A stretch of DNA of 64,000 bases, taken from positions 1 to 64,000 of the forward strand of contig CDMY01000069.1 in NCBI GenBank assembly GCA_001179505.1. The letters run 5' to 3'. Of the stretch, positions 1 to 14,376 are shown in pieces. Below the pieces are notes generated by a model. It did not search any database and was not told the DNA's origin. It saw only the letters and a list, made by a program, of their open reading frames with translations. A program made the position numbers and the translations under genes. Every line of letters starts with the position of its first letter. Position 1 is the first letter of the stretch. This DNA comes from Vitrella brassicaformis CCMP3155 (Eukaryota > Protista > Chromerida).

Positions 1-395
1 GAGCTCATCTTTGTGAGACACAGCCAGAGAGTGTTTGTTTCCTCTGTCTCTCTCAGTCAGTCAGTTGTCGTTGTTGATTTCTGCTGTGTGTCCGCCAGTC
101 ACCAAGCGCTTTCGGCTTTTAACCTGTCGGATAAATAGCGTGCTCAGGTTGCTCGTAGAGTAGTTGATGACCAAGCAGATGGAGTCAGAGTTTTTTCTCT
201 CTGAAAAGACCCAGTCTGCCTAACGCTATGGCGTTGGGCTTCCGCTGGAATAGGGCTCCGTTTCACGAAGCTACCTAAGAAAGCGGGTATCTCCCTGGGC
301 TCTGACCAGGGGTAACTGGCCAGACGGTAATATGTTTGGTTCTGCTGCTCGTTTCACGTAGCAGCCTGGGCTAGGGCTTGAGTGCCCTTCGACAG

Positions 396-1949
396 ATGCT
401 GTCGCAGAGCACTCTATCGCCAGCGGAGCGGCGCTTCCTGGAGGACGGCGTGCGTCAAGGCTTCCGCAACGACGGCCGGGGACTGCTGGACTATCGGCCA
501 TACACTGTGGAAACCGGGATTCTTCCATCAACATCAGGTGGGATGTAAGGCTGGGCTTCTTGTTGGAGTAGGGTCACGGCCTGTTTCCATGTTTGCGCGT
601 CTGCTTGCAGGTTCCAGCCGTGTGCGAAGCTTCGGCACTGACGTGCTCTGCGCCGTCAAGGTAATACACGTACTGTATCCGTTCGAATCAGCCTCACATC
701 TGAGGGGCGAGGCTAGCTGCAGTCACACTATCCCTCCCACACCGGTCATGCGTGGCTCAGGTTGACATGGGCTCTCCGCCAGCCGACAAGCCCGACGAGG
801 GCGTCGTGTCCGTCAACGTGGAATGGTGAGTGGCCAAACCAGCCACCCATGAAACAATGGCTGTTCATGTACCTGCTGTGTGCTGGGCTGTTCATCAGCT
901 CGGCGTCTGTAGCGCCTCACGGTGAGCTGGAGGGCGGGTCGAGTTCGCGTGCGACGGGTCGTGTGGGTGGCGGGAGGAGGGATGACAGCGGGGAGGGCTG
1001 GAGTGCCTACCTGGGGGCGCTGCTCGACGACCTCTGCCTGCCCCCGTGTGCGCTCGACAAGAAGGCCCTGTGCGTGTCGCCACACGTCTACGCATGGCAC
1101 GTCAATGTCGATATTCTGGTGGGTCGGTGGGTGATCAAAGGGGAGGGGAGTCAGCCTGGCCTGGCAGCCATCGTGTGTGTGTGTGTCTGTGTGTGTTGGT
1201 TGATCGATCAGTTGTTGAATGCCGCTGGCGGCGTGTTGGACGCCATGAGCCTCGCCATGCGATCCGCCCTCCGCGACACCACGTAAGTAACCAGACCACA
1301 CACACAGCCCTGTGGACACATCAACCTCTCGTGTGTATGTGTGTGCATGTGTGTGTTGTGTGCGCAGGTTGCCGAGCGTATCCGTTGGTTCCCGCGATGA
1401 GTGGGAGGAGGAAGACACTGCGGATGGCGTGCAGCAGTCCAAGCCTCCCTTCGATGTGGACGAGCGGCCCACGGCGGGGACGCCATTCCCCGCACAGGAC
1501 ATCCCTGTCTGCGTCACTGTCGGACAGGTCAGTCAGCCACTCAAGGAACGAAGATCCGGCCATCTACCTGTCATCTGTCGCTTGTGTGTGGTGTCAGGTG
1601 TGCAGTCACTACGTGTGGGATATGTCGTCTGAGGAGGAGAGCTGCGCGGAGGCCCAGGTCACCGTGGCCGTCGACAGAAACGGACGATGCGTCGCCGTAC
1701 ACAAATCGGGTGGATACACATACACACACATACAGCATGACGCCCACAGCAGTCTTCGGACGCACCTATCTGTATGCAATATGTGTGTGTGTAGGCATGG
1801 CATCGATTGACCCGACAGGTCTTCTGCAAGTGCTCAAGGACGCCGGCCGTGTGGGCGTCGAGCTCATCAAGAAGCTTGAGGCGGCCATGGCCAAGCTGGG
1901 GACGGGGCAGCCAGTGGTGCGGGAGAGGCTGGGGTTCATGGCCGCCTGA
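396..1949 (+). CDS. RRP42: Exosome complex RNase PH-like subunit RRP42 (EXOSC7), about 7 exons
   Basis: ATG at 396 opens MLSQSTLSPAERRFLEDGVRQGFRNDGRGLLDYRPYTVETGILPSTSG. GT-AG spliced exons continue GSSRVRSFGTDVLCAVK, WHVNVDIL, GGVLDAMSLAMRSALRDTT, DIPVCVTVGQ, AQVTVAVDRNGRCVAVHKSGG and end ELIKKLEAAM...GFMAA*. This is the RRP42 pattern (R.DGR...YR; D.....GG..DA...A...AL..T). Confidence 0.9.
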
Positions 1950-2647
1950 CTGATACATGTGATCGACGTGAGTGATATATCTAGGTCTGTCTGCGTGAGG
2001 GTGTGGTGTGCAGCCACTAGCTAGCTAGGACATTTGTGTGCCAAATGGATGAGGACGTGACGTGACGAGACGAGACGTGTATTCAATCAAGAGGAGTCTC
2101 TCCGTTGGTCTCTACGATAGATATTGTCCGTACACACACGGCACGGCACGCCCATGCATACGTCCGTGAGCATGCGGTCATCCCACGCATCCCCCCGCAC
2201 ACCCAACCCACCCACGCCCCATTTCTGTATGTCTGTCTGTCTCGGCTGTCTATCTACTTGGGTCCATCCATTTCTCGCTGCCTCCATCTCTCACTTTTGT
2301 ATGTATGTATGTGTGTAGCGGCACCTGGTACATACGAGAAGAGGTCACTCACCTGAGGTGGATGCCTGCGCTGCATGCCTCGTGCAGCTCCTCGTGCAGC
2401 TCGCGACGCGACGTGCGGCTGCATACACACCACAGGACAGACAGACAGCACAGTGAGAAGCCACTGCATGTGAGTGCGGTGCCGTCCGACATACATGAAG
2501 TGCTCGTAGCAGAGGAGCGAGCTGCACGTATCGACACACACACAGGGGGAGAACGCAGACGATGAGCGGATGGCAACTTGCTTATCCTTCTGTCTGTCTG
2601 TCTGTCTGTCTGTATGCGTGTGTGAGTGTGTATGTGTCATCGGTAGG

Positions 2648-4867
2648 CTACTTTTTGAGCACGTGCTTGAAGAACGGATCTGAACACAAACATACACAAC
2701 TCGTGTGCGGGTGTGGTGTGTTTGTGTTTCCGTGTCTCTCCCTCTCCTCCCTGCCTCTCTCTCTTACGCCGGAGTGCCTCGGCGCCGAAGATGCGCTCAT
2801 ACGGATTCAGGCACAACATCCTGCACACACACACCGCCACACAGACAGACCCGCGGAACCCCATCTCGCCACGAGCGCCATAGATCCGTCCGTATGTGCA
2901 TTGGGGTGTGTCTCTTCTCTTGCTCACTCACTTGCTGAGCAGGTCTACGGCCATGGCTTCAGTCATGTCATCCATGTCCTGGCGGGGCGGCACCGCCTCG
3001 CGCAACACATCCACCAACGCACGCTCGGGCGCCTCCCCAAACTGCAGCGTCTGCACCACCTGCACACACAACACAACACACGGCACACTCAAAGAGACAA
3101 CATCCAGCCGCCCTCCCCTCACCTCGTAGTTTGGGAGTGTGTCGACGCCCGCCCATGTGGAAGGGCTGGGCTTGCCCATGACGCGGCACACCTCGGACAG
3201 CGTACCGTCGTTGCTATTGCCCTTCCCCCCAAACAGACGACGGCCCGTCAGCAGCTCGCCGAAGATGCAACCCACCGCCCAGATGTCCACCTGACCGATG
3301 CAATCAATGCATATGAATGAATGGACGCACGCATAACATAATCGCTCGTGTGAGCAGACGGCTTTGTGTATTTATTGTATGTATGTATGTATGTTTGTTG
3401 TGTCTGTAACCGTACCGCCCAGAAGTGGTCCTTCTGGTAGAGCAGAAGCTCGGGGCTGCAGTACATGGGGGTGCCTGACGGTACGGTGGACGGACAGGAC
3501 ACATAGAGGCAATACAATTCAGCCTGTGTGTGTTGTATATTGCGTGCGGTGTGGTGTGGCGACGTCCATGTGATGTCCGCACGGACCGACGTATTTGGGT
3601 TTGCGCGGCTTCTTGGACGGGTCGCACGGGGTCGGCTGCACCATCCTGACACACACAGGGAGAGAGAGAGAGAAACGGACCAAGGTGGCTATGGTGGGTA
3701 TGTGGGTGTTGCTGAGGCTCACCCGAAGTCGCAGATTCTGACATAGTGGACGTCGTGTGACCGTCCGTGCTGGTCCAGCTTCAGCAGAATGTTGGAGGGC
3801 TTCAAATCACAATGCATCACTGCACAGAAACACACACAGCTGGGAGCCTCCGCAACGCAAGAGCGTTCGCCTCGTTAGTCCCCACCTTCCTTTCCCCCGC
3901 AACCGCCCCTACAAATACCAACAAGCAAACAACACACAGACAAGAAGAAGTCCCCCAGACCACTCTCTCTCTCTGTGCCTGCGTGTGTCAGTGTGGGTAT
4001 TGGTGCACTTACGAGTGTAGGTGTGTGACGCCGAGCAGCACCTGGTAGAGGATCTCTGCCACCTGTCGGATGGGCATCTGCTGTCGGTTGTGGTGGATGT
4101 AGGAATGGTAGTAGCTGTCCAGCGTCACGTCACCCAACTCTACACACACACCACACACACACACGTCCACGCGTGGAAACAATGCCCTCAGCCTGGCTGC
4201 AGAGGTGGTGTGTCAGTGGTACCTAGAGTGTCAGTGGTACCTAGAATGAGGAATGCAGTGTTGTCCTGGTCGATGTGTGTGCCGAAGAGCTTGACGATGT
4301 TGGGGTGCCAGGCCATGGCGAGCGTCGAGATCTCCAGGTATGTGTCGGGCGACAACGGCCGCACCACACCACCTCCACCCAACGAGCTACTCTTGCATCC
4401 TATCTGCACACACATCCATCCATCCAACCACCACCCGCAGTAAGTAAGGGCCAGAATGACCTGCCACGCAGCGCAGCCCTATGTACGTACCCGTTTGATG
4501 GCGTAGTGTCCCGCCTGTATGTCCATGTCGAGCTCCCTCTTGATCTGCCCAGCCGCCTCCCTCGTCAGAAACCCAGAAAACACAGACCCATAGGTGCCGC
4601 TGCCCTGTTCATAAGGATAATTAACCATACACAGCACCCATCTGATCGGTGCGGGATCTTTCTACGTCCGCCGGCTTATCTGCCTTCTTTCCCGTTCCTT
4701 ACCAGCCGAGTGAGGTGTGTGAAGCGGCCAAGGAAGCCCGTGGATGTGTCCGGAGGCCCCGGAGGCGGAGGCGCGTCCATGTCCACATCAACGGGGTCTG
4801 CGGCGCCAGGCGAAGGACCAGCCCGACGATGACGGCCACGGCCTGCCATCGGGGCAAAAGGGCGCAT
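2648..4867 (-). CDS. Divergent cyclin-dependent-kinase-like Ser/Thr kinase (non-PSTAIRE, non-RD), multi-exon
   Basis: Spliced motifs: LGSGTYGSVF (Gly loop), YAIKR, SPDTYLEISTL (alphaC), HPNIVKL, MHCDLKPSNILL, ICDFG, YVGTPMYCSPE, DIWAVGCIFGELLTGRRLFGG, MGKPSPSTWAGVDTLPNY, LCLNPYERIFGAEALRHPFF, then TAG at 2648-2650. The start is the ATG at 4867 or 4849. Confidence 0.85.
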
Positions 4868-4899
4868 CTTGGCTGCTCAGCTGGCTGCCCCCGACCCCA

Positions 4900-4915
4900 G
4901 ATTTACGTGTAAATC
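4900..4915. promoter_or_regulatory. Perfect 7-bp inverted repeat (GATTTAC-GT-GTAAATC) near the centre of the CDK/cyclin bidirectional intergenic region
   Basis: Read directly: GATTTAC at 4900-4906, GT spacer, GTAAATC at 4909-4915. It lies between divergent ATGs at 4867 and 4954. Function is inferred. Confidence 0.45.
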
Positions 4916-4953
4916 CACGCTTCGAGAGCTGCCCCCCTCTCCGCCCAGCTGAG

Positions 4954-6603
4954 ATGTTAGGAGGAGGCTCGGCGGGCACGTCTACCGGCTCGGGTGAGGG
5001 TCGAGATCTGACGGACGTAGAAAAGCAGCGGCAGGAACGCGTGTACATCACGCGCAAGTATAGGCAATGGCACATGAAGGTCGTGGAGGTACAGAACACA
5101 CAGACAGACCCAGCCATCCATCCATCCATCCATCCATGTGTCAGCACGACAAGAAGCAGCACTTCATGATCCGTGGGTTCGACGCCTACGCCAACGCATT
5201 GGTTGCCGGGTGGACGACGCAGGACGGGACGGTGGCCTCGCTGCGGTTCGGTGCGGTGAGGGCGGGGTTTTGGGATCTGCTGGTCAACTGGCACAACACC
5301 AGCTCACTCAAGATTGACGAGAAGGTCATGTCCACTGCAATGAACATGTACGTGGCGGGCGAATGGGGCGAGGCAGGGAGGGAAGAAGGGGAGCCTCAGG
5401 GGAGAAAAGGAGGAAAGGGTCCGTGTCTGTGCCGTCACTGGTTGGTCTGCTGTGTCCATCTCATTCATCTGTGTGCAGGTTGGATCGGTACGCGAACAAG
5501 CGGTATCTGAGCGGCCTGCGGTCTCCCACCGACTACACCGCACTCATCATCAAGAAATACTACACGGTGAGGCCGTGAACGAACACGTGCACACACGTAC
5601 ACACACTCCTGATGATGACATGCATGTGATTTGCATGCTCTCCTCAAGGCGGGTTTGGTGTGCATCCATCTGGCGTACATGAATGACCACATCGAGCACG
5701 AGTACGGCGTCCCGGCGCAGCGGTTCTCTCAGAAGTTCTTCACGCGCCAGCTGCGTCTGATGCCCTCTCCCAGCCACTGGGCCACCCACGAGGAGCTGCA
5801 GATGACCCAGATAGAGGTGCTGCACCACCTCAACTACATCGTCTACTACCCATCGCCATTCGAGGCAAGAAAACGGGGAGAGAGACAGAGGGATGGCGTG
5901 TGGATGTTTCTGAGTGTGTGGGCGAGGGATGCATGTGTGTGTGTGTGCATGAGTGCAGACGGTAGAGCGTTACCTGACTGCGACGGGCCTCAAGGTGTCG
6001 GAGGAGCTCAAGGCCTATCTGCACGAGAAGGCGCAATTCCTCCTGGTCAGTGACATGGAAGGAGGGAACCAATGACATGGATGTGTGTGTCCTCTCCTGC
6101 CACTGTTGGTCAGTACCTGGCGTTTGGTTCAATCCGCTGCACGTGTCAGTCGACGGCCCAGCTGGCGTCCATGGCCCTGCACTGCGCCATCCGCATCGCC
6201 AAAAATGACCCCAACATCGCCACACCACGCGACCTAAAACTGTGGGTAATGAGGGGACGGGCATTGACGGACATGGACGGGTGGATGGATGCGTCTGTGT
6301 GTGTGTGTGTGTGTGTGTCAGCCCCTCGAGTTGGCGGATGAGAGCATGTTGACACACAGCCATGTGCTGTGGGAGACCGGCAAGAAAGTCATGGCCAACC
6401 TGCAAGTAGACCAGGTGCGCCCTGCCGCCAGCCCAGCCCACCACACACAACCATGGGACAGAGACATCAGCGTGGTGCGTCCGTCCCTGTCTGCGGTGCA
6501 GGTCAAGTTGGATGCGACGCTGCAGCGGTTCCGCTACACGCTGGAGACGGTGCGGCATGTGGAGGCGCTGCTGACACAGCCGCTCACACGGCGGGCGGGC
6601 TGA
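4954..6603 (+). CDS. Divergent cyclin (cyclin-box fold), multi-exon
   Basis: Spliced sequence VRAGFWDLLVNWHNTSSLKIDEKVMSTAMNM|LDRYAN...KKYYT|AGLVCIHLAY...ELQMTQIEVLHHLNYIVYYPSPFE aligns with the cyclin box MRAILVDWLVEV...LYLAVNYLDRF...LVGVAALFIASK...MExxILxxLxFxLxxPTPF. The junction AAC AT|G TTG GAT is in frame. Stop at 6601-6603. Confidence 0.8.
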
Positions 6604-7289
6604 CAGACAGACACAGGGATGGTGTAGAGATGCTTACGGGATGGATGGTGTAGAGGGTCGGCAGGCGACCACAGCGAGGAAGGGAGGGACAAACAGACCG
6701 ATTGATCGATGGCGGACAATACATTCAATGGCGTGAGAATGACCGACAGACTGTGAGCGTGAGCTCCTCGGATGTGCTTGCTGCATGCCATGTGTTTGTG
6801 CAGTCACTGCAGTGTACATGGAAGGTGCGTGCGTGGTGCGTATATGTCCATCCAGCCGTGTCTTGAGTGAGTGAGTGAGTGAGTGAGCAGGTTGACGCGA
6901 TACATGAATTAATGATTGATGCACTCATTCGTCAATCCATCCATCCATCCACGCGCACACATTCGTTCGCACAATTTCGACACACAAGGATGGCTGTCAG
7001 GGCTGGCAGGAAGATGCGCCGGAAGTGAAGTAAGGGCCACAAATGCATGAGTGAGGTCAGCAGCACTCACACACACACGTATAGTGACCACACCGCCAGG
7101 CAATCGATGCATTCTTCGTGCCAAGCATGAGCAGACAGTCCAACCCATCTCATCTCATCTCACACACATCGATGGATTTATCCACTCACAGAGCCGACTG
7201 TACAATCCCCCCCCCCCCCCCCCCGCCCCTCCACCGCCACACGTGCAGGTCAGAACAGCAGAGTAGTGTGGTGAGTGTATCGTGTGTGT

Positions 7290-10200
7290 CTACTCCTCCT
7301 CTCCTACCTTGGCCGCTCCCTCTGTCTCGCCGTACCCGTCTCCGTCTCCCTCTCCCTCCCCCTCTCCCCCCTCTACCTTGGCTCTCTGTCTGGCCTGGCT
7401 GGGTCGCAGCACTATCGTTCCGTCAGTCCTCTCTGTCACACGACACCTCTTCTTAGCCCCCTTCCTCACCATTCCAACCACCGACTTAGGCCTGCCGCCG
7501 TACGTGTACTCGAGGGACAGCACGACACTGTCGAGTGTCGGGACGGCTGAAAACGCCTCAACCACACACTCAGCGAAGGAGCCGCAGCACGTGCGCAGCT
7601 CGCGGGCGCTGAGGCGATGAAGCTTGATGCACACCTCGAGTGATGAAACACGGCCACTGTCCATGACCTCCCTGACTGCCTCGCTCTCCCCGTCCCCGTA
7701 CATTTCCCAACCGATAGAGATGTCAGTGCGTACCTGATCGTCTAAGTCATAGTTGTAGCGCCATCGATTGCATGTGATGTCATACTTCAGCTGTACTGCT
7801 AACTCCTTGCCTTCGCCTGACACGGACTCGAGGCCATCAGGCAGCAGTGTGCATGTGGCCTCAGGGTCCGCGCAGACAGACAACTCATAACGCACCTTCT
7901 CTAGGTAGGGGGAGAGGGCATGCAGCACATAGCCCGCCCCACGCCCAGACGCACCCACGCCCACTGGCAGCGCCCCCTCCCTCACCACAGTAGATGACAC
8001 ACTCGGAAACAGCGATGTGGGGTCGTCCGTGATGTATGAGGGCAGCAGGCCGGTGCCAGGGTAATGCACGACGGTGAGTTCGTGGACAAGCTCAAACACC
8101 ATCGAGTCCAGCCCGGGGGCCTCTTTGATGGTGTCGCCGGGCGCACGACTGTAGAGGGTCACCTTCTCGGCCTGCTGGCAGCACACCTCCACCGTCGAGG
8201 GGGAGTCGGTGAGGGCCTTCTGGTCGCCTCTGAAGGGCAGGTGGACGATGGGACCGCCCTGCAGCTCGCCCTCCTCGATGCGGCCGAAGTAGTCCTCGCG
8301 CGCGTCAGGGGCAAGGCACTTGGTGCGAAAACGATGCAGATTCTGTGCAGACGAACACGCAGACGGAAGGGCTGATGGGATGGCGATGGATGCAGAAAGT
8401 GTCTGTGTTCTTCCTTTACCTGTATGTCGTGTGTGTCATGGATCGTCCCGATGGCCATCTCGATCTCCTCCAGGGGGCCTGCCCCATCGCTCGTCGAGCC
8501 CACCAGATTGACGAAGCCGCTGCAGTCGGAGAACTCGACGCGGCCGGTCAGCGAAGTGAGGCTCTTGGCTGATTTGCGCACACACAGAGGGCACAATGGG
8601 GAAGGCGTGAGGCCGGAAATCAGAGCTGGTTTCTTCACCTGATTCTGTATTGTTGAGGACGTCTCTCACTTGGTCGAGACTCACAGCATTGCCACAACTC
8701 GGATCACCCTGCAGACAGAGAATGAATGCATGAAGACAAGTCGTCCCCTCTTTCTTTTTACAGACCTTTTCACAGATGATGTGCAGCGAGTTGATGCCCC
8801 CCTGAGCCTCCCGGATCCACGAGCGCGGCGCAGTCATGGTGATGTCCACCACACTGAGGCCCTGCAGTGACGGCATCTGGTACAGCCGGTCCTCCGCCAG
8901 CTTGGCCCACACCTTGTTCACGCTGGCCGACTCCACACGCTCAAACACGACAGCCTTCTGCACGGAGACAAGAAAGAAAGTGATGAATGCCAACAAGCAG
9001 TTGTATTTTGTCAGCCAGCTCCCCTCCCTGACCTACCTTGTTCCGTGGCAGGTCGAGTTTTGTCATCTTTTCCATGTCGCGACGCACGGACCAGTCCAGC
9101 TCCCACTGTGGCTTACGCCGGCCGTTCTTGTAGGTGGTGGCGCACTCGAGGGGGCAGTGCAGGTCAACACACTCGACAGTTGCCGACAGGCGCTCCAGCA
9201 AACACACCAGCGACGCGGTGGGAGGGTGGTAGATGCGCACGTCAACACACTCAGACAACGGACCTGACCACAACGCCATAAACGACAAACCACACATGGC
9301 TGCACGTACATGGAGTTTTGTTTGCCCTCTTGCTCCCGCCCTCCTCACCGGCCGTCCATTTCTTAGCGATTTTCATCTTGGGTGAGTCCTCCAGCTCGAC
9401 GATGGGGTGCATGCCGGCCTGCTGGGTGAGGTGGTGGAAGAAGCTGTTGACGCTCGCCAGCGACTCCAGACACGACACGAAGCCCAGCATGGCGCCCATC
9501 CCCACACCGTCGGCCATCCACAGGGCCTCAGGCAGATCTTCAAGCTGCGACTTGGTCTGAGAAAGAGAGCGCGAAGTGGCGAGTTCTCGCTCTGTGTTTC
9601 CTGTATTGTGTTGTGTTGTGTTGTGTTTGTGCTGTGCTGTGCTGTGGTGTGTTGTGTTGACCTGCTCGGTGTCGTCTTGGTCCATTTCGTTGAGTTTGTG
9701 TCGGATGGCGTCGAGTTTGCGAGTGTTCTCCTTCATCTGCTTGGTAGCGACCTTGTCTACGTGGCTGATTTGCGTGTTGGCGTCGGCACACACCATGCTC
9801 GACCACACGCGAATCTGACGATCAACTTCCTGAACAACACCACACACATACAAGGAGAGGCTGTGTCTGTTGATGTCGTTTGGTGTGTGTATGGTATTGG
9901 CCCTGACCGACTCACTTACCTGCATGCGGTGTTGCTGTTCGAGCGATTCGGGGTCCTGGGCGGCCTTTCTCAACTCATACACCTCACGAGCCTGCATGAT
10001 GGCATTCAATACACACACGCCAACGCGCTGCCTCCCCCCTTTTGCTAGCCTTCCTGCCCCACGAAGAAAAGTACCTGCTTCTCGGCCTGTTTGGCCTGCT
10101 TGAGTTGCGCCTCCAGCTTCGCCGTCATCTTCTTGAGAGCCTTCAGCGCATCAGCAGGACCAACCTCAACCACATCCTGCACACACAGCAACGAAGCCAA

Positions 10201-10528
10201 ACCACACAACACACGGAAATGCATCCATTTCGACACCCCGTCTGCATCCCTCACTGCCCACCTCGATATCCTCATCGCCGTCCGACACCTCCATCTTATC
10301 TCTCCCGCCGCCCTTCTTATCGCCCTTACCCTTCTCATCCCCCCGCTGCCTCTTCTTGCCGGCCTTCCTGCGCCGCCCTCCCTTGCCATATGCGGAGTCC
10401 TCCTCGTCACTACTGCTGGTGTCAACGTCCATGATGGGTCTCCGCTTCTGCCCGCCGGACGCCTTGAGCAAGGCCAGCTGGCGGGCCGTCATGCGATGGT
10501 CCTCCGCACCCTCACCTGCATCCTCCAT
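7290..10528 (-). CDS. Hypothetical protein: basic/acidic N-terminus, coiled coil, F-box-like motif and long C-terminal domain, multi-exon
   Basis: Chain of minus-strand ORFs 10166-10582, 10045-10425, 9251-10018, 8941-9348, 8436-8996, 8159-8638 and 7290-8192, with GT-AG junctions. LEDLPEALWMADGVGMGAMLGFVSCLESLASVNSFFHHL resembles an F-box (L.DLP.EL...IL..L....L..V...F..L). Confidence 0.6.
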
Positions 10529-10829
10529 GGTGAGAGGGAAAGAGAGGATGGCAGATCTACCTTGCGCTCTTCTGGCCGTCACCTCGCCAAAGTGCGGCGA
10601 GAATCTCCAGTGAGACGAGACGGAAACCCCGCAAACCCTAACTAATGAAATGGATCCACATTTCGCAATTCCCGTCCGCTCTGTTGCCTTCTTTCAGCCG
10701 CGCCTCCCCCATCTCTGTTTCGTTGGACTGCTTGTTGGCTTATGCGCTTACCTATTCTTCTTCAACCCGTCCCTCTTTGTCCAAGTCTTACCCGCTTCTC
10801 GAGGCCTTCTTCCCGTGATCCTGGCGAGT

Positions 10830-12263
10830 TCACCGCGGGTATTTATGTTTCATGGATGCACACGTGGTACCAGGGTCCCATTTAATGTCATCAGTTCCCG
10901 CTTCTGTATGCATCTATCAGAGACCTGCACACCGAGCCAGCGGCCGCCGACTTGGCCGACGTGGAGGAGGCGGCGCCGTCAACCAGGGGCCAGCACTCGC
11001 ATTCAATGCGGCTCCGCGGTTCGTATCGGCTGGGGGACCTCACTGCGGAGCTGACGGCAGGATACCGATAATGATACCGACAATGGCAGGGTGGCAGGGT
11101 AGCAGGGAGGGAGGGAGGGCTGGCTTGTATTCATGATGACTGTCTTGTGATGGATGGATGGATGGACAGGAAGAGGGGCTGATAGATACGGGGAGCGTGG
11201 CAACGAGGGCAAAGGCAGGGTATGGGTGCGACTGGCATCCTGTCGTGCCCGTAGGCAATCGTTGCCTACATTTTATATCCATGGACGTATTTGCTGAGCC
11301 GCCGCCGCAACACCAGGAGGGGAAAGGAATGACGGCATCTGTATCGTGGCGCTGCTCGGCCGCAACCCGACCAAGACGTTCAGGTGAGTCAGTCAGTCAC
11401 CCAGTCAGTCATCACACGCACCAGCCACCTTCTCTGTCTATGTCTCTGGTTGGTTGGTGTCAATGTGTTGTTGGCTGCCCGCTGCAGGAAGGGCCTCCGA
11501 CAAGACGGCTGCGGCTGGACAAGGAGGCCGCCAAGAGGTTCACTACACATCACCTCCCCGAATGAGGTAAGGAAGGCGACACACACACATAACGTATGTG
11601 TGTGTGTATGCCTTGGTCAATCCACATAAATTATCTCTCTGACGTGGATGCACACCAGGAGGGTCGGCATTCAATGTCATCAGTTCCTGTTTCTGTATGC
11701 ATCGCATCTATCAGAGACCTGCGCACCGAGCCAGCGGCCGCCGACTCGGCCGAGAGAGTGTTCTTAGGGAGCTGGTGGAGGCGGCCAAGAGGCATCTCTT
11801 CGACTACAACGACGCTGAGCGCGAGAAGATTTGGCGGCTGCGGGGAGCCATGAGCAACATACAGACAAACGAAAGGCACACATACAATGAAGGTATGGCT
11901 GTTCGTGTCTGCTGTGTGTGTAGCGCGAGTTGGACGCCCTACTCGTCAGCCCCAGTGCGAGAGGTGCGGTGTGGTTGGAGATCGCCCTGGAGAAGGAGCG
12001 GGCCAAGACCATGCTGCTCGAGTAGGTAGCCATCCATCCATACATCCACCCATACAAACTTACAAGCTTACAAACTTACAAACATGCACACAACGCGTGT
12101 TCGTTTTTGCAGGTTCCAGCTCTCCGCCTTCCAAGAGTGCCTGTAGCGCCGCAAAGGAGCCATGTTAGCCCTGTCAGTGACCCTGCTGCCGCCTGGCAGG
12201 TGAGGAGGAATCCGAAGCGCACACACCCTGCAGGGTCCGGTGCACTCTGCATGTGGCTTCCAT
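10830..12263 (+). pseudogene. Two tandem degenerate copies of a multi-exon repeated gene module (internally deleted copy about 10830-11230; longer copy about 11250-12263)
   Basis: 10850-10960 is repeated at 11640-11755. 11250-12263 matches 30288-31265 in inverted orientation, and 11030-11230 matches 29340-29720 inverted. Relative to the 25.7 kb copy, exon 1 has a 1-nt frameshift and exon 2 has an in-frame TGA. Confidence 0.7.
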
Positions 12264-12317: not shown

Positions 12318-14376
12318 TTGACGCTCGAGGCCATCAAGTCAGCGCCCGACACTGTGGCCATGCCCGCCGTGCGGTTCTGGTCAGCAAATCAACCAGTGCA
12401 CACACACATAGAACAGCCCACAAAGAGAGTCCCAGCTCACCGCTACGTTCGTTCCGGCGTTGCTGTGTGTCCTTCATATCGATTGTGTGCGATGAGGAGC
12501 TACTTGTCGAGAAGTTGGACGACCTACGGCGGCGATTCGGAGAGGCCGACAGAATGTGGCTCAATGAGCAGGTACGTGCGTGCGGTGTGCTGTCTTCACT
12601 GCATCATGCACCATCCTGTATGTGCTGTGCTGTGATACGTCGTGTTGTGTTGTGTCGTGTCGTGTCGTGGTGTGGTGTGGTGCAGGAACCAGTTTCCCAT
12701 GCCCTGATAAAGCTGTTGTCGTCCGCGCACCGCCCCTCTGTGAGCAAGCGCGCCATCGCGTCCATCGGCGTGGACGGTGTGGTGTGTGTGGTGTGTGCAG
12801 ATGAGGCCGTACCTGCACAAGATTATCCACAAGGCGCTGGCTTTGGCACAGCACGACCCGCATGCCCACTGGCCGGATGAGGACGACGACTCGTCGTGGC
12901 TAGTCAGAAGCGCTGCCCTGCAGGTGAGTCACCTACCGGGGAAGGATGCTGTGATGCGTCCGTCGTCTTGTGTCACGCGTGTCATGTTGGTGTGGTATGT
13001 ATCTGTAGGTCCTGTCGGTGTTGATCCAGTCGCAGCCCGACCGCTTTGAGGAGCTCTACAAGACCGTGACGGGCCCCCTGCTCACACGCCTTCCCCTCGA
13101 GTGGAAGCAGACCGTCCGAGTCAAGGTCTTCCGTGTCGTAGGCGACCTCCTCGAAGCCGCCGTGATGCACCAAGTAAACCACACACACACGCGCGCCCTC
13201 ATGTGCATTGGGCCACTCTTGGTTCTGTGTGTGTTATATAATGAATCCACCGGTCCGTTGAATTGATTCTCAGGGCAGCTGTGGTGAGCGATGGCTGAGT
13301 GGCGAGACGGGCCAGCAGGAGGGGCACAAGGCGGCCCTGCCGCCCCAACGGCCGGGCGCAGCGCTGTTCGTCCGGAAACTCACCCTCGCTGACGCGTTCA
13401 CAGGTAAGACGGCCACCACAGCCCAGACAGACATGGGAAGAGGACCTTTCTTGTCTGTGTGTGGTCAGTGTTCCGTCAGTATTACGGCGACTCGTCTTCC
13501 CTGGCTCATCGGCACGCTGCACTGGAGCTCTTCAAGAGGATGGCCCGGAGTATGCCCGCGGCGCTCGAGCCCGAGCTGCCCAAGATGCTCCCCGAGCTGA
13601 CCAAGACCCTTCAGGACTCCCCCAGCAGCCTGCGACTGGACACACTGGTGCTCCTCTCCCTCCAGGCCCGCCACTTCCATGTCAGTCAGCCAGCCAGCCA
13701 GCCAGCAAACAGAGAGCGATCGACACGTGTGTGTGTGGGTGTGGGTGTGGGTGTGGTGGTGGTGCATTCATTGTGTGTGTGCTGTCGGTTGTACGTATGT
13801 GTGTGCAGGACCCCAGGGTCCTCCGCAGCATGGCGCCCACTCTCTTCCCCCTCCTCTTGCATCTGATGGACGACACTTGCCCCGCGGTCGCCTCCCACTC
13901 GCTCCGTGTGTGCGGTGCGTACGTGTATGCGCTGCGCCTGGACCCCCCGTCACCCCTGTGCAAGGGGGGCGAGAAGTGCGTGCACAGCCTGTGGGAGGCC
14001 GTTCACCGGAAGCTGGCACACGAGGACACCGCCCGGTAAGTACGCAGGGAGGCAGGGAGGCAGGGAGGGAGGGCAGCAGAGCAGGGCAGAGCAGAGCATG
14101 AGAACCTCTCTGTCGCTGTCTGTCTGTCTGTCTGTCTGTCTGTGTCTGTGTGTCGGCACGCAGGAGGTCAAGGACGCCGCCACGTCTTGCTTGCGGCACA
14201 TAATCAACGTGGCCCCAGCATTCGCATCAAAGCCAGCCCGTGGGGGCCGCTACTGCCGCGGGACCAAGCCGCAAACCACCGGCACCACAGCACCCCCAGT
14301 CGCCATCCAGAACACCAGGCTCGTGCGGCGCTTCCAGCGGCAGACAACCGGCGTCGTCTACGGCCGACCCAAGTGA
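12318..14376 (+). CDS. CAND1/TIP120-like HEAT-repeat fragment (middle part only; possible pseudogene)
   Basis: Exons HDPHAHWPDEDDDSSWLVRSAALQ, EELYKTVTGPLL, LPELTKTLQDSPSSLRLDTL and RKLAHEDTAR|QEVKDAATSCLRHII parallel the recalled CAND1 motifs DDDDMSWKVRRAAAK, EFYKTVSPAL, LNDKSSSSNLKIDAL and RLKAADIDQEVKERAISCMGQII. The first exon begins at a splice acceptor and no own ATG was found. Stop at 14374-14376. Confidence 0.7.

What the first reader, a model, noticed from the sequence alone, without database searches (positions are those of the whole stretch)
2648..6603. Dedicated head-to-head CDK-cyclin gene pair only 86 bp apart
Seen: a complete CDK-like kinase (minus, ATG 4867) and a cyclin-box protein (plus, ATG 4954) diverge from an 86-bp spacer. 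Known: CDKs need a cyclin partner, but the two genes are not normally adjacent in eukaryotes. Inference: this is a co-transcribed, private kinase-activator module, possibly a lineage-specific cell-cycle or life-stage switch outside the canonical CDK families.
Basis: partly seen in the sequence, partly recalled or inferred. Interest (0 to 1): 0.8.

Follow-up and report, generated by a model that had tools for sequence, protein, structure and literature searches.

The report
Back-to-back kinase and cyclin genes
In the alga Vitrella brassicaformis an unusual CDK-like kinase gene and a very divergent cyclin-like gene do sit back to back 86-173 bp apart and both are expressed, but such spacing is normal for this compact genome, so a private kinase-activator pair is plausible and unproven.

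Summary
The window is the start of scaffold CDMY01000069.1 of Vitrella brassicaformis CCMP3155. Both genes are real, spliced and expressed.

The plus-strand gene (4954-6603, 8 exons, 351 aa) is exactly the public protein CEL92335.1, and a JGI transcript confirms every intron. It matches no Pfam cyclin model and has no detectable sequence relative in 1.8-5.8 billion proteins. Language-model features and the ESM Atlas structure nevertheless place it among cyclins, so it is an orphan cyclin-fold protein.

The minus-strand gene is a catalytically complete CMGC kinase with a CDK-like C-lobe. It has no PSTAIRE motif, HCD instead of HRD, and no T-loop threonine. They add a 23-nt micro-exon and splice over the supposed stop at 2648, so the coding sequence ends at 2349.

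The 86-bp gap holds for the longest ORFs. The public annotation starts the kinase at 4780, which gives 173 bp. The published median intergenic distance in Vitrella is 92 bp, with head-to-head pairs enriched, so the spacing itself says nothing. Transcript contigs show the kinase without the cyclin in two of four runs.

A cognate pair remains possible (about 35%) but was not tested. The scan has noted other kinase-cyclin linkages in this genome on other DNA.

The parts
2349..4867 (-). CDK-like (CMGC) protein kinase gene. It has 14 coding exons: 4703-4867, 4491-4604, 4241-4403, 4013-4139, 3886-3908, 3723-3819, 3587-3645, 3416-3474, 3123-3290, 2932-3059, 2768-2820, 2652-2679, 2495-2521, 2349-2418. 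The product is 426 aa from ATG 4867. The public annotation starts at ATG 4780.
   Evidence: Spliced RNA contigs and joints. Frame check. Pfam Pkinase on exon pieces and on the annotated product. The 56-aa exon 3123-3290 has CDK3, CDK2, CDK11, PfPK5 and Pho85 as best solved-structure matches, E 5e-10.
3886..3908 (-). 23-nt micro-exon of the kinase. It inserts GGCGGKE just before the catalytic loop.
   Evidence: Joints 3819>3886 and 3907>4012 in four runs. Only this exon keeps the reading frame with the acceptor at 3819.
2648..2652 (-).
   Evidence: Joint 2521>2652 in X2, X7 and X8. The translation runs on to a stop at 2351-2349, which agrees with the annotated gene end at 2349.
4868..4953 (.). 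86-bp spacer between the two longest-ORF ATGs. It is a shared promoter region and holds part of the cyclin 5' UTR.
   Evidence: Sequence. The JGI cyclin transcript starts at 4929, inside the spacer.
4900..4915 (.). Palindrome GATTTAC-GT-GTAAATC in the middle of the spacer. It is a candidate protein-binding site and is not statistically supported.
   Evidence: The core TTACGTGTAA occurs once in the window against 0.93 expected.
4876..4953 (.). Two CAGCTG palindromes, as the inverted repeat CTCAGCTGG / CCAGCTGAG (4876-4884 and 4945-4953), flank the spacer core.
4954..6603 (+). Orphan cyclin-fold protein gene with 8 exons: 4954-5088, 5145-5347, 5479-5566, 5649-5864, 5959-6045, 6114-6245, 6322-6414, 6502-6603. 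The product is 351 aa (CEL92335.1).
   Evidence: Nearest ESM Atlas clusters are Cyclin_N and Cyclin_C families, and structural TM is 0.54-0.68 to cyclins B3, K, A2, F and Q for residues 205-351.
5865..5958 (+). GC-AG intron of the cyclin-like gene.
   Evidence: Splice-site check. The JGI transcript joins 5864 to 5959.
6604..6910 (+). 3' UTR of the cyclin-like mRNA, at least 307 nt.
   Evidence: JGI transcript L001 maps without a break from 6499 to 6910.

Best explanation
These are two separately transcribed, expressed Vitrella genes that share a short bidirectional promoter region, as most neighbouring genes do in this compact genome.

Gene A is a catalytically complete CMGC kinase. It has a CDK-like C-lobe and a remodelled N-lobe and activation segment. 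SPDTYLE replaces PSTAIRE and HCD replaces HRD. By my manual alignment to CDK2 (inference) there is no T-loop threonine and no arginine triad. So it should not depend on CAK-type T-loop phosphorylation.

Gene B is a lineage-restricted protein with the two-domain cyclin fold that has lost the sequence signature of the family.

On present evidence the adjacency most likely reflects genome compaction and not a dedicated, co-regulated kinase-activator cassette. Each protein may work with other partners. The identities are shown. The absence of an exclusive partnership is inferred from base rates and uncoupled transcript levels.
For: - Gene models and expression.
- Kinase identity.
- Cyclin fold: plus the UniRef name 'Cyclin C-terminal domain-containing protein'.
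- Genome norm: median intergenic distance 92 bp and head-to-head pairs enriched. The same paper states that head-to-head co-expression is usually modest (PMC4501334).
- Local genes alternate + - + - +.
- Transcript contigs: X8 has the kinase at depth 127 and the cyclin near 0. X2 has 8.8 against 0. X7 has 162 against 82. X1 has about 5 against 6.6.
- The scan read about 1590 windows of this genome and noted several other kinase-cyclin proximities. One of them was judged chance neighbours by its follow-up.
Against: Under random gene order an immediately adjacent CDK-like/cyclin-like pair is expected only about 0.1 times per genome. That estimate rests on my assumed family sizes. Both proteins are strongly divergent exactly where CDK and cyclin touch, which could be co-evolution. 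CDK-cyclin fusions exist in related lineages (PMC3019232). A kinase that is always present with a variable cyclin is the classical CDK/cyclin pattern. Contig depth is a poor measure of expression.
Confidence: 0.55

Rival explanations
1. The two genes are a cognate private pair. The orphan cyclin binds and activates the neighbouring non-RD CDK-like kinase. Binding alone positions the alpha-C helix and opens the activation segment, with no T-loop phosphorylation needed, as with CDK5/p35 or viral cyclins. The kinase is made constitutively and the cyclin conditionally from the shared promoter region, so the cyclin level sets the switch.
For: Adjacency of these two families is unlikely by chance, about 0.1 expected per genome on assumed family sizes. 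Both are lineage-specific and divergent: no relative of the cyclin was found and the kinase lacks PSTAIRE and the RD arginine. The kinase appears in all four transcriptomes and the cyclin in two. Divergent cyclins that escape sequence detection do partner CDK-related kinases in Plasmodium, as with CRK5-SOC2 (PMC7308089). CDK-cyclin fusions occur in oomycetes, ciliates and Theileria (PMC3019232).
Against: There is no interaction, co-evolution or synteny evidence. The spacing is the genome norm. By manual alignment the cyclin appears to lack the Lys/Glu pair that canonical cyclins use to contact CDKs (inference from memory of cyclin A). The kinase's HCD loop and an activation-loop tyrosine 8 residues before SPE resemble the self-activating DYRK/GSK3 kinases (inference).
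Confidence: 0.35
2. The plus-strand protein is not a CDK regulator at all. It would be a cyclin-fold protein of another function, as the fold is shared with TFIIB and Rb-pocket proteins, or a fast-evolving orphan. The kinase would be a cyclin-independent CMGC kinase that activates itself through its activation-loop tyrosine.
For: No Pfam cyclin model matches, even at E<=10. The only hit is a weak TFIIB-repeat match (E 0.26) to the shorter form P0001. There is no sequence match among solved structures. The kinase catalytic-loop exon matches DYRK2/3 best and its alpha-C exon gives no CDK match.
Against: 27 of the 30 nearest Atlas clusters for the whole protein, and 29 of 30 for the C-terminal half, are cyclin families and not TFIIB or Rb. 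Structural neighbours are cyclins B3, K, A2, F and Q. The top 60 solved-structure matches of the kinase C-lobe exon are all CDKs.
Confidence: 0.1

Closest known systems
Plasmodium CRK5-SOC2 divergent CDK/cyclin complex (PMC7308089)
   Same: It is an alveolate CDK-related kinase outside the canonical families, paired with a cyclin so divergent that sequence methods do not recognise it and that lacks key cyclin-box residues.
   Different: The CRK5-SOC2 partnership was shown by reciprocal immunoprecipitation and matching knockout phenotypes. Here nothing but gene adjacency links the two. No sequence similarity between SOC2 and the Vitrella protein was found or tested.
   Same: A CDK-like kinase is physically linked to its own cyclin domains in SAR-lineage genomes.
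   Different: Those are single polypeptides with strong Pfam Cyclin_N/C matches and a catalytic Asp-to-Asn substitution. Here there are two divergent genes on opposite strands, the kinase keeps its catalytic Asp (HCDLKPSN), and the cyclin fails Pfam.
Canonical CDK2-cyclin A
   Same: The kinase has a G-loop GxGTYG with the Thr-Tyr pair, the AIK lysine, the alpha-C glutamate in an EIS-L context, DFG, a PELLL segment and a CDK-type alpha-F/alpha-G region. The cyclin-like protein is all-helical with 12 predicted helices and an R...D...LDRY pattern that resembles the MRAIL and DRF motifs.
   Different: There is no PSTAIRE. HRD is HCD. By manual alignment (inference) the Arg50/Arg126/Arg150 equivalents are Leu/Cys/Gln and there is no Thr160 equivalent. 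There are inserts of about 15 and 7 residues in the N-lobe. The cyclin Lys266/Glu295 equivalents appear not to be conserved (inference).
Head-to-head gene pairs with short spacers in chromerid genomes (PMC4501334)
   Same: The genes are divergent with a gap of about 90-170 bp, the typical Vitrella arrangement.
   Different: The two products here belong to families that are known to work together, which is not the rule for such pairs.

Membership tests
Cyclin-dependent kinase (CDK) family | Eukaryotic protein kinase domain with complete catalytic motifs | tested here: met
   Pfam Pkinase matches the exon pieces (E 5e-6 and 3e-4) and the annotated product. GSGTYGSV, YAIKR, HCDLKPSN, DFG and SPE are read directly from the sequence.
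Cyclin-dependent kinase (CDK) family | Closest overall similarity to CDKs within the CMGC group | tested here: inconclusive
   Exon 3123-3290 has all top 60 solved-structure matches among CDKs. The catalytic-loop exon matches DYRK2/3 best. The alpha-C exon gives only a weak CaMKK2 match. Other exons give nothing clear. The joined protein was not searched.
Cyclin-dependent kinase (CDK) family | PSTAIRE-type cyclin-binding alpha-C helix | tested here: not met
   The sequence reads SPDTYLEISTL. Only the Glu and the EIS-L context are kept (no CDK match for this exon).
Cyclin-dependent kinase (CDK) family | T-loop threonine and the RD arginine for CAK activation | tested here: not met
   HCD stands in place of HRD. 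The activation segment QPTPCDPSKKPRKPKYVGTPMYCSPE has no Thr at the CDK2 Thr160 position by manual alignment (inference).
Cyclin-dependent kinase (CDK) family | Activity depends on binding a cyclin | not testable with these tools
   This needs co-IP, a kinase assay, or a complex prediction. Only monomer folding by reference is available here.
Cyclin family | Match to the Cyclin_N (PF00134) or Cyclin_C (PF02984) HMMs | tested here: not met
   There is no cyclin family at E<=10 for the full protein, its halves or its exons. The only hit is a TFIIB repeat at E 0.26, from the same clan, to the shorter form P0001. UniRef nevertheless names it 'Cyclin C-terminal domain-containing protein', and the basis of that name was not checked.
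Cyclin family | C-terminal cyclin fold | tested here: met
   For residues 205-351 of the ESM Atlas model (whole protein pTM 0.71, pLDDT 0.66), TM by query is 0.54-0.68 to cyclin B3, K, A2, F and Q clusters. 29 of the 30 nearest feature clusters are Cyclin_C.
Cyclin family | N-terminal cyclin box, the CDK-binding fold | tested here: inconclusive
   Whole-protein features are nearest to Cyclin_N clusters (score 0.95, 189 of 256 features, 27 of 30 hits). My single-sequence AlphaFold2 model was too poor (pLDDT 41), and Foldseek and VIA-align gave nothing specific.
Cyclin family | Binds and activates a CDK | not testable with these tools
   Biochemical.
Bidirectional-promoter gene pair | Divergent orientation with starts less than 1 kb apart | tested here: met
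   The ATGs are 86 bp apart for the longest ORFs and 173 bp apart in the annotation. The cyclin transcript 5' end is at or before 4929.
Bidirectional-promoter gene pair | Correlated expression of the two genes | tested here: inconclusive
   Both are present in X1 and X7. Only the kinase is present in X2 and X8. Contig depth cannot measure expression levels.
CDK-cyclin fusion protein | Kinase and cyclin domains in one reading frame | tested here: not met
   The genes lie on opposite strands and have separate transcripts.

The most novel reading that the evidence does not exclude
A lineage-specific cyclin that has diverged beyond sequence recognition sits next to, and shares a promoter with, its own cognate non-RD CDK-like kinase. 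That kinase would need neither PSTAIRE contacts nor T-loop phosphorylation. This would be a physically linked two-gene kinase-activator cassette, a genomic alternative to the CDK-cyclin fusions of related protists, acting as a Vitrella-specific cell-cycle or life-stage switch.
Probability: 0.35. Interest if true: 0.6.

Novelty: new member of a known kind. Interest (0 to 1): 0.35.

Why it matters
Chromerids are the free-living relatives of apicomplexan parasites. Several apicomplexan mitotic CDK-related kinases have no identified cyclin (PMC6157590), and the CRK5 partner SOC2 escaped sequence-based cyclin surveys and was found by co-purification (PMC7308089). If gene adjacency in the compact Vitrella genome does mark a cognate pair, it would give a cheap genomic handle for matching orphan cyclins to atypical CDK-like kinases. 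It would also give an example of CAK-independent, cyclin-only activation. If the two are only neighbours, the case is still useful: it shows that tight head-to-head spacing carries no functional information in this genome.

Tried and rejected
1. My first kinase model used an acceptor at 3840/3839 (CVCFCA insert). RNA joints show a 23-nt micro-exon instead, so I rejected it.
2. The stop at 2648 is spliced over in three runs.
3. Pfam and NCBIfam on the cyclin exons, halves and whole protein gave no cyclin hit.
4. Sequence search of solved structures with cyclin exons and the whole protein gave nothing.
5. The word search with one exon and with both full-length forms found only the protein itself.
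6. The exhaustive representative search with the 72-aa exon found only the protein itself.
7. The JGI metagenome scan for relatives of the cyclin found none. A scan for a kinase transcript contig, wanted so that the full kinase could be given by reference, also found none.
8. A scan of viral contigs for an MRAILVDW-type motif, meant to collect intron-free cyclins for a profile comparison, gave 0 hits.
9. The single-sequence AlphaFold2 model had pLDDT 41. Foldseek and VIA-align gave only generic helical bundles, with cyclins D1 and A recurring at E of about 2-3, which is not significant.
11. The spacer palindromes are not more frequent than chance.
12. Look-ups of earlier findings by sequence were blank, which means nothing.

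The joined kinase protein was never sent to a search or folding tool. It was translated only locally to check the frame.
Full report
**Where the window comes from.** An exact look-up of the plus-strand product places it on NCBI record CDMY01000069.1 (196,907 bp) of Vitrella brassicaformis CCMP3155, assembly GCA_001179505.1. The coordinates there are the same as in the window, so the window is the start of that scaffold. Earlier notes of this scan had already named the organism.

The public annotation in the first 16.6 kb reads:
- an RNase PH gene, 396-1949 (+);
- a Pkinase gene, 2349-4780 (-), 403 aa;
- the cyclin-like gene, 4954-6603 (+), 351 aa;
- an 863-aa gene without Pfam families, 7290-10853 (-);
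- a HEAT/TPR_CAND1 gene, 12554-14203 (+).

Gene orientation therefore alternates along the scaffold.

**The observation.** I read both strands and built GT-AG exon models. The ATGs at 4867 (-) and 4954 (+) are the first in-frame ATGs of the two longest reading frames, and 86 bp separate them.

The plus-strand model has 8 exons and 351 aa, with one GC-AG intron at 5865-5958. It is identical to CEL92335.1 (P0002). A shorter form from a JGI transcript (P0001, 311 aa) starts at an internal Met only because ten Ns interrupt the contig upstream. That 1398-nt transcript (L001) maps to 4929-6910 with every intron removed as modelled. So the cyclin mRNA starts inside the spacer or upstream of it and has a 3' UTR of at least 307 nt.

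**RNA evidence for the kinase.** Contigs of four public runs, all of which proved to be spliced and therefore RNA-derived, were laid on 2000-7900. They confirm the kinase introns and correct the model in two places.
- Between the exons ending at 4013 and starting at 3819 lies a 23-nt micro-exon (3886-3908).
- The TAG at 2650-2648 is overlapped by a used donor (GT at 2651-2650). Two further coding exons (2495-2521 and 2349-2418) add a 32-residue tail.

The CDS is then 426 aa from ATG 4867, with a stop at 2351-2349. This matches the annotated gene end.

The annotation starts the protein at ATG 4780. The longest kinase contig shown begins at 4786. Which ATG is used is therefore open, and the CDS gap is 86 or 173 bp.

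**What the kinase is.**
- Pfam Pkinase matches the catalytic-loop and alpha-F exons and the annotated whole product.
- The 56-aa exon 3123-3290 has only CDKs among its 60 best solved-structure matches: CDK3, a Cryptosporidium CDK2-like kinase, CDK11, CDK2, PfPK5, Pho85 and CDK16, at E 5e-10 to 2e-7.
- The catalytic-loop exon reads HCDLKPSN and matches DYRK2/3 best.
- The alpha-C exon gives only a weak CaMKK2 match.
- The remaining exons give nothing clear.

Read directly from the sequence, the kinase has GSGTYGSV, YAIKR, the alpha-C Glu within SPDTYLEISTL followed by HPNIVKL, HCD, DFG, and GTPMYCSPELLL.

By my manual alignment to CDK2 (inference from memory), the three arginines that hold the phospho-Thr160 are Leu, Cys and Gln here. 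No Thr sits at the Thr160 position. A Tyr sits 8 residues before SPE, as in GSK3 and DYRK. The protein is therefore an active-looking CMGC kinase with a CDK-like C-lobe and a strongly remodelled cyclin-facing side. It is probably independent of CAK.

**What the plus-strand protein is.** Every sequence method came back negative:
- No Pfam or NCBIfam cyclin model matches the exons, the halves or the whole protein, even at E<=10. The only hit is a TFIIB repeat at E 0.26, to the shorter form P0001.
- No solved-structure chain matches by sequence.
- No relative appears in the exhaustive search of 1.84 billion representatives with the 72-aa exon.
- None appears in the word search of 5.8 billion proteins with either full-length form, even at E<=10.
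- None appears in the JGI metagenome contigs.

Two lines still place it among cyclins. First, the language-model features of the whole protein lie nearest to Cyclin_N families: score 0.95, 189 of 256 features shared, 27 of 30 hits. Second, the ESM Atlas holds the exact sequence with a usable model (pTM 0.71, pLDDT 0.66). Its residues 205-351 lie nearest to Cyclin_C clusters by features (29 of 30). By structure they match cyclin B3, K, A2, F and Q clusters at TM 0.54-0.68. UniRef also calls it 'Cyclin C-terminal domain-containing protein'.

My own single-sequence AlphaFold2 model was too poor to use (pLDDT 41), and its fold searches were uninformative. It does predict 12 helices, the number expected for an N-terminal helix, two five-helix repeats and a C-terminal helix.

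I conclude with about 85% confidence that this is an orphan, highly divergent cyclin-fold protein. The N-terminal, CDK-binding box is supported only by features, not by structure.

**Is the arrangement special?** The genome paper reports 22,817 genes and a median distance between genes of 92 bp. It finds closely spaced genes head to head more often than expected, and it notes that co-expression in such pairs is usually modest (PMC4501334). So 86-173 bp head to head is the default here.

What is unusual is only the combination of families. Assuming about 30 CDK-like and 40 cyclin-like genes (not measured), random order gives about 0.1 adjacent pairs per genome.

Against that stands the look-elsewhere effect. 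The scan has read about 1590 windows of this genome and has noted a kinase-cyclin fusion, a pair 13 kb apart that its follow-up judged to be chance, and a CAK cluster.

**Expression.**

| Run | Kinase contig depth | Cyclin contig depth |
|---|---|---|
| X7 | 162 | 82 |
| X1 | about 5 | 6.6 |
| X8 | 127 | practically absent |
| X2 | 8.8 | absent |

(All.) Contig depth is a weak measure and absence is not proven. Still, this argues against tight co-regulation. It would fit a constant kinase with a conditional cyclin equally well.

**The spacer.** It contains a central palindrome, GATTTAC-GT-GTAAATC (4900-4915), and two flanking CAGCTG palindromes. Neither is statistically remarkable.

**Verdict.** 'Co-transcribed' is wrong for divergent genes. 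A private partnership is neither shown nor excluded, and I put it at about 35%.

Known precedents are the divergent CRK5-SOC2 pair of Plasmodium (PMC7308089) and the CDK-cyclin fusions of oomycetes, ciliates and Theileria (PMC3019232). Both genes are already in public databases, with automatic names only.

The joined kinase protein has no stored reference, so it was not searched, classified or folded as a whole.

Noticed in passing
window 5864-6502: Contig 12 of run X7 has 4 fewer letters between 5864 and 6502 than the model and the JGI transcript. An alternative donor at 6241/6242 (CT|GTGGGT) would explain this. It would shift the frame and truncate the cyclin-like protein near residue 290. 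It could be a minor isoform or an error in my arithmetic.
   Followed up: partly
window 6415-6501: The last intron of the cyclin-like gene is 87 nt long, in frame and free of stops. If retained it would add 29 residues without breaking the protein. The JGI transcript has it spliced out.
   Followed up: partly
window 4744-4953: The cyclin reading frame stays open upstream to an ATG at 4744, antisense to kinase exon 1. A transcript starting further upstream would encode a 421-aa form. No contig seen supports this.
   Followed up: partly
window 1-2418: A 2463-letter contig of run X8 runs from the kinase 3' exons without a break through 2000-2418 and about 1 kb further left. The kinase 3' UTR and the convergent RNase PH gene (396-1949, +) therefore probably overlap or abut.
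   Followed up: no
window 4404-4474: The X8 kinase contig reads on from exon 4241-4403 into intron 2 (to 4474), while X7 has this intron spliced out. This is either an unspliced precursor or intron retention.
   Followed up: no
window 4210-4250: The donor of kinase exon 4241-4403 lies in a tandem duplication of about 16 nt (CTAGGTACCACTGACA twice). This offers a second, frame-breaking GT donor 16 nt downstream.
   Followed up: no
window 7290-10853: The next gene (minus strand, 863 aa in the annotation) has no Pfam family on record. Its 300-aa last-exon ORF also has none. Run X1 differs from the window at 9 positions within 7524-7763 but at none in the kinase and cyclin exons.
   Followed up: no
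window 2349-4780: The annotated kinase product has 403 aa. The RNA-supported model from the same ATG 4780 gives 397 aa, so the public model probably differs at one splice junction, most likely around the micro-exon.
   Followed up: no
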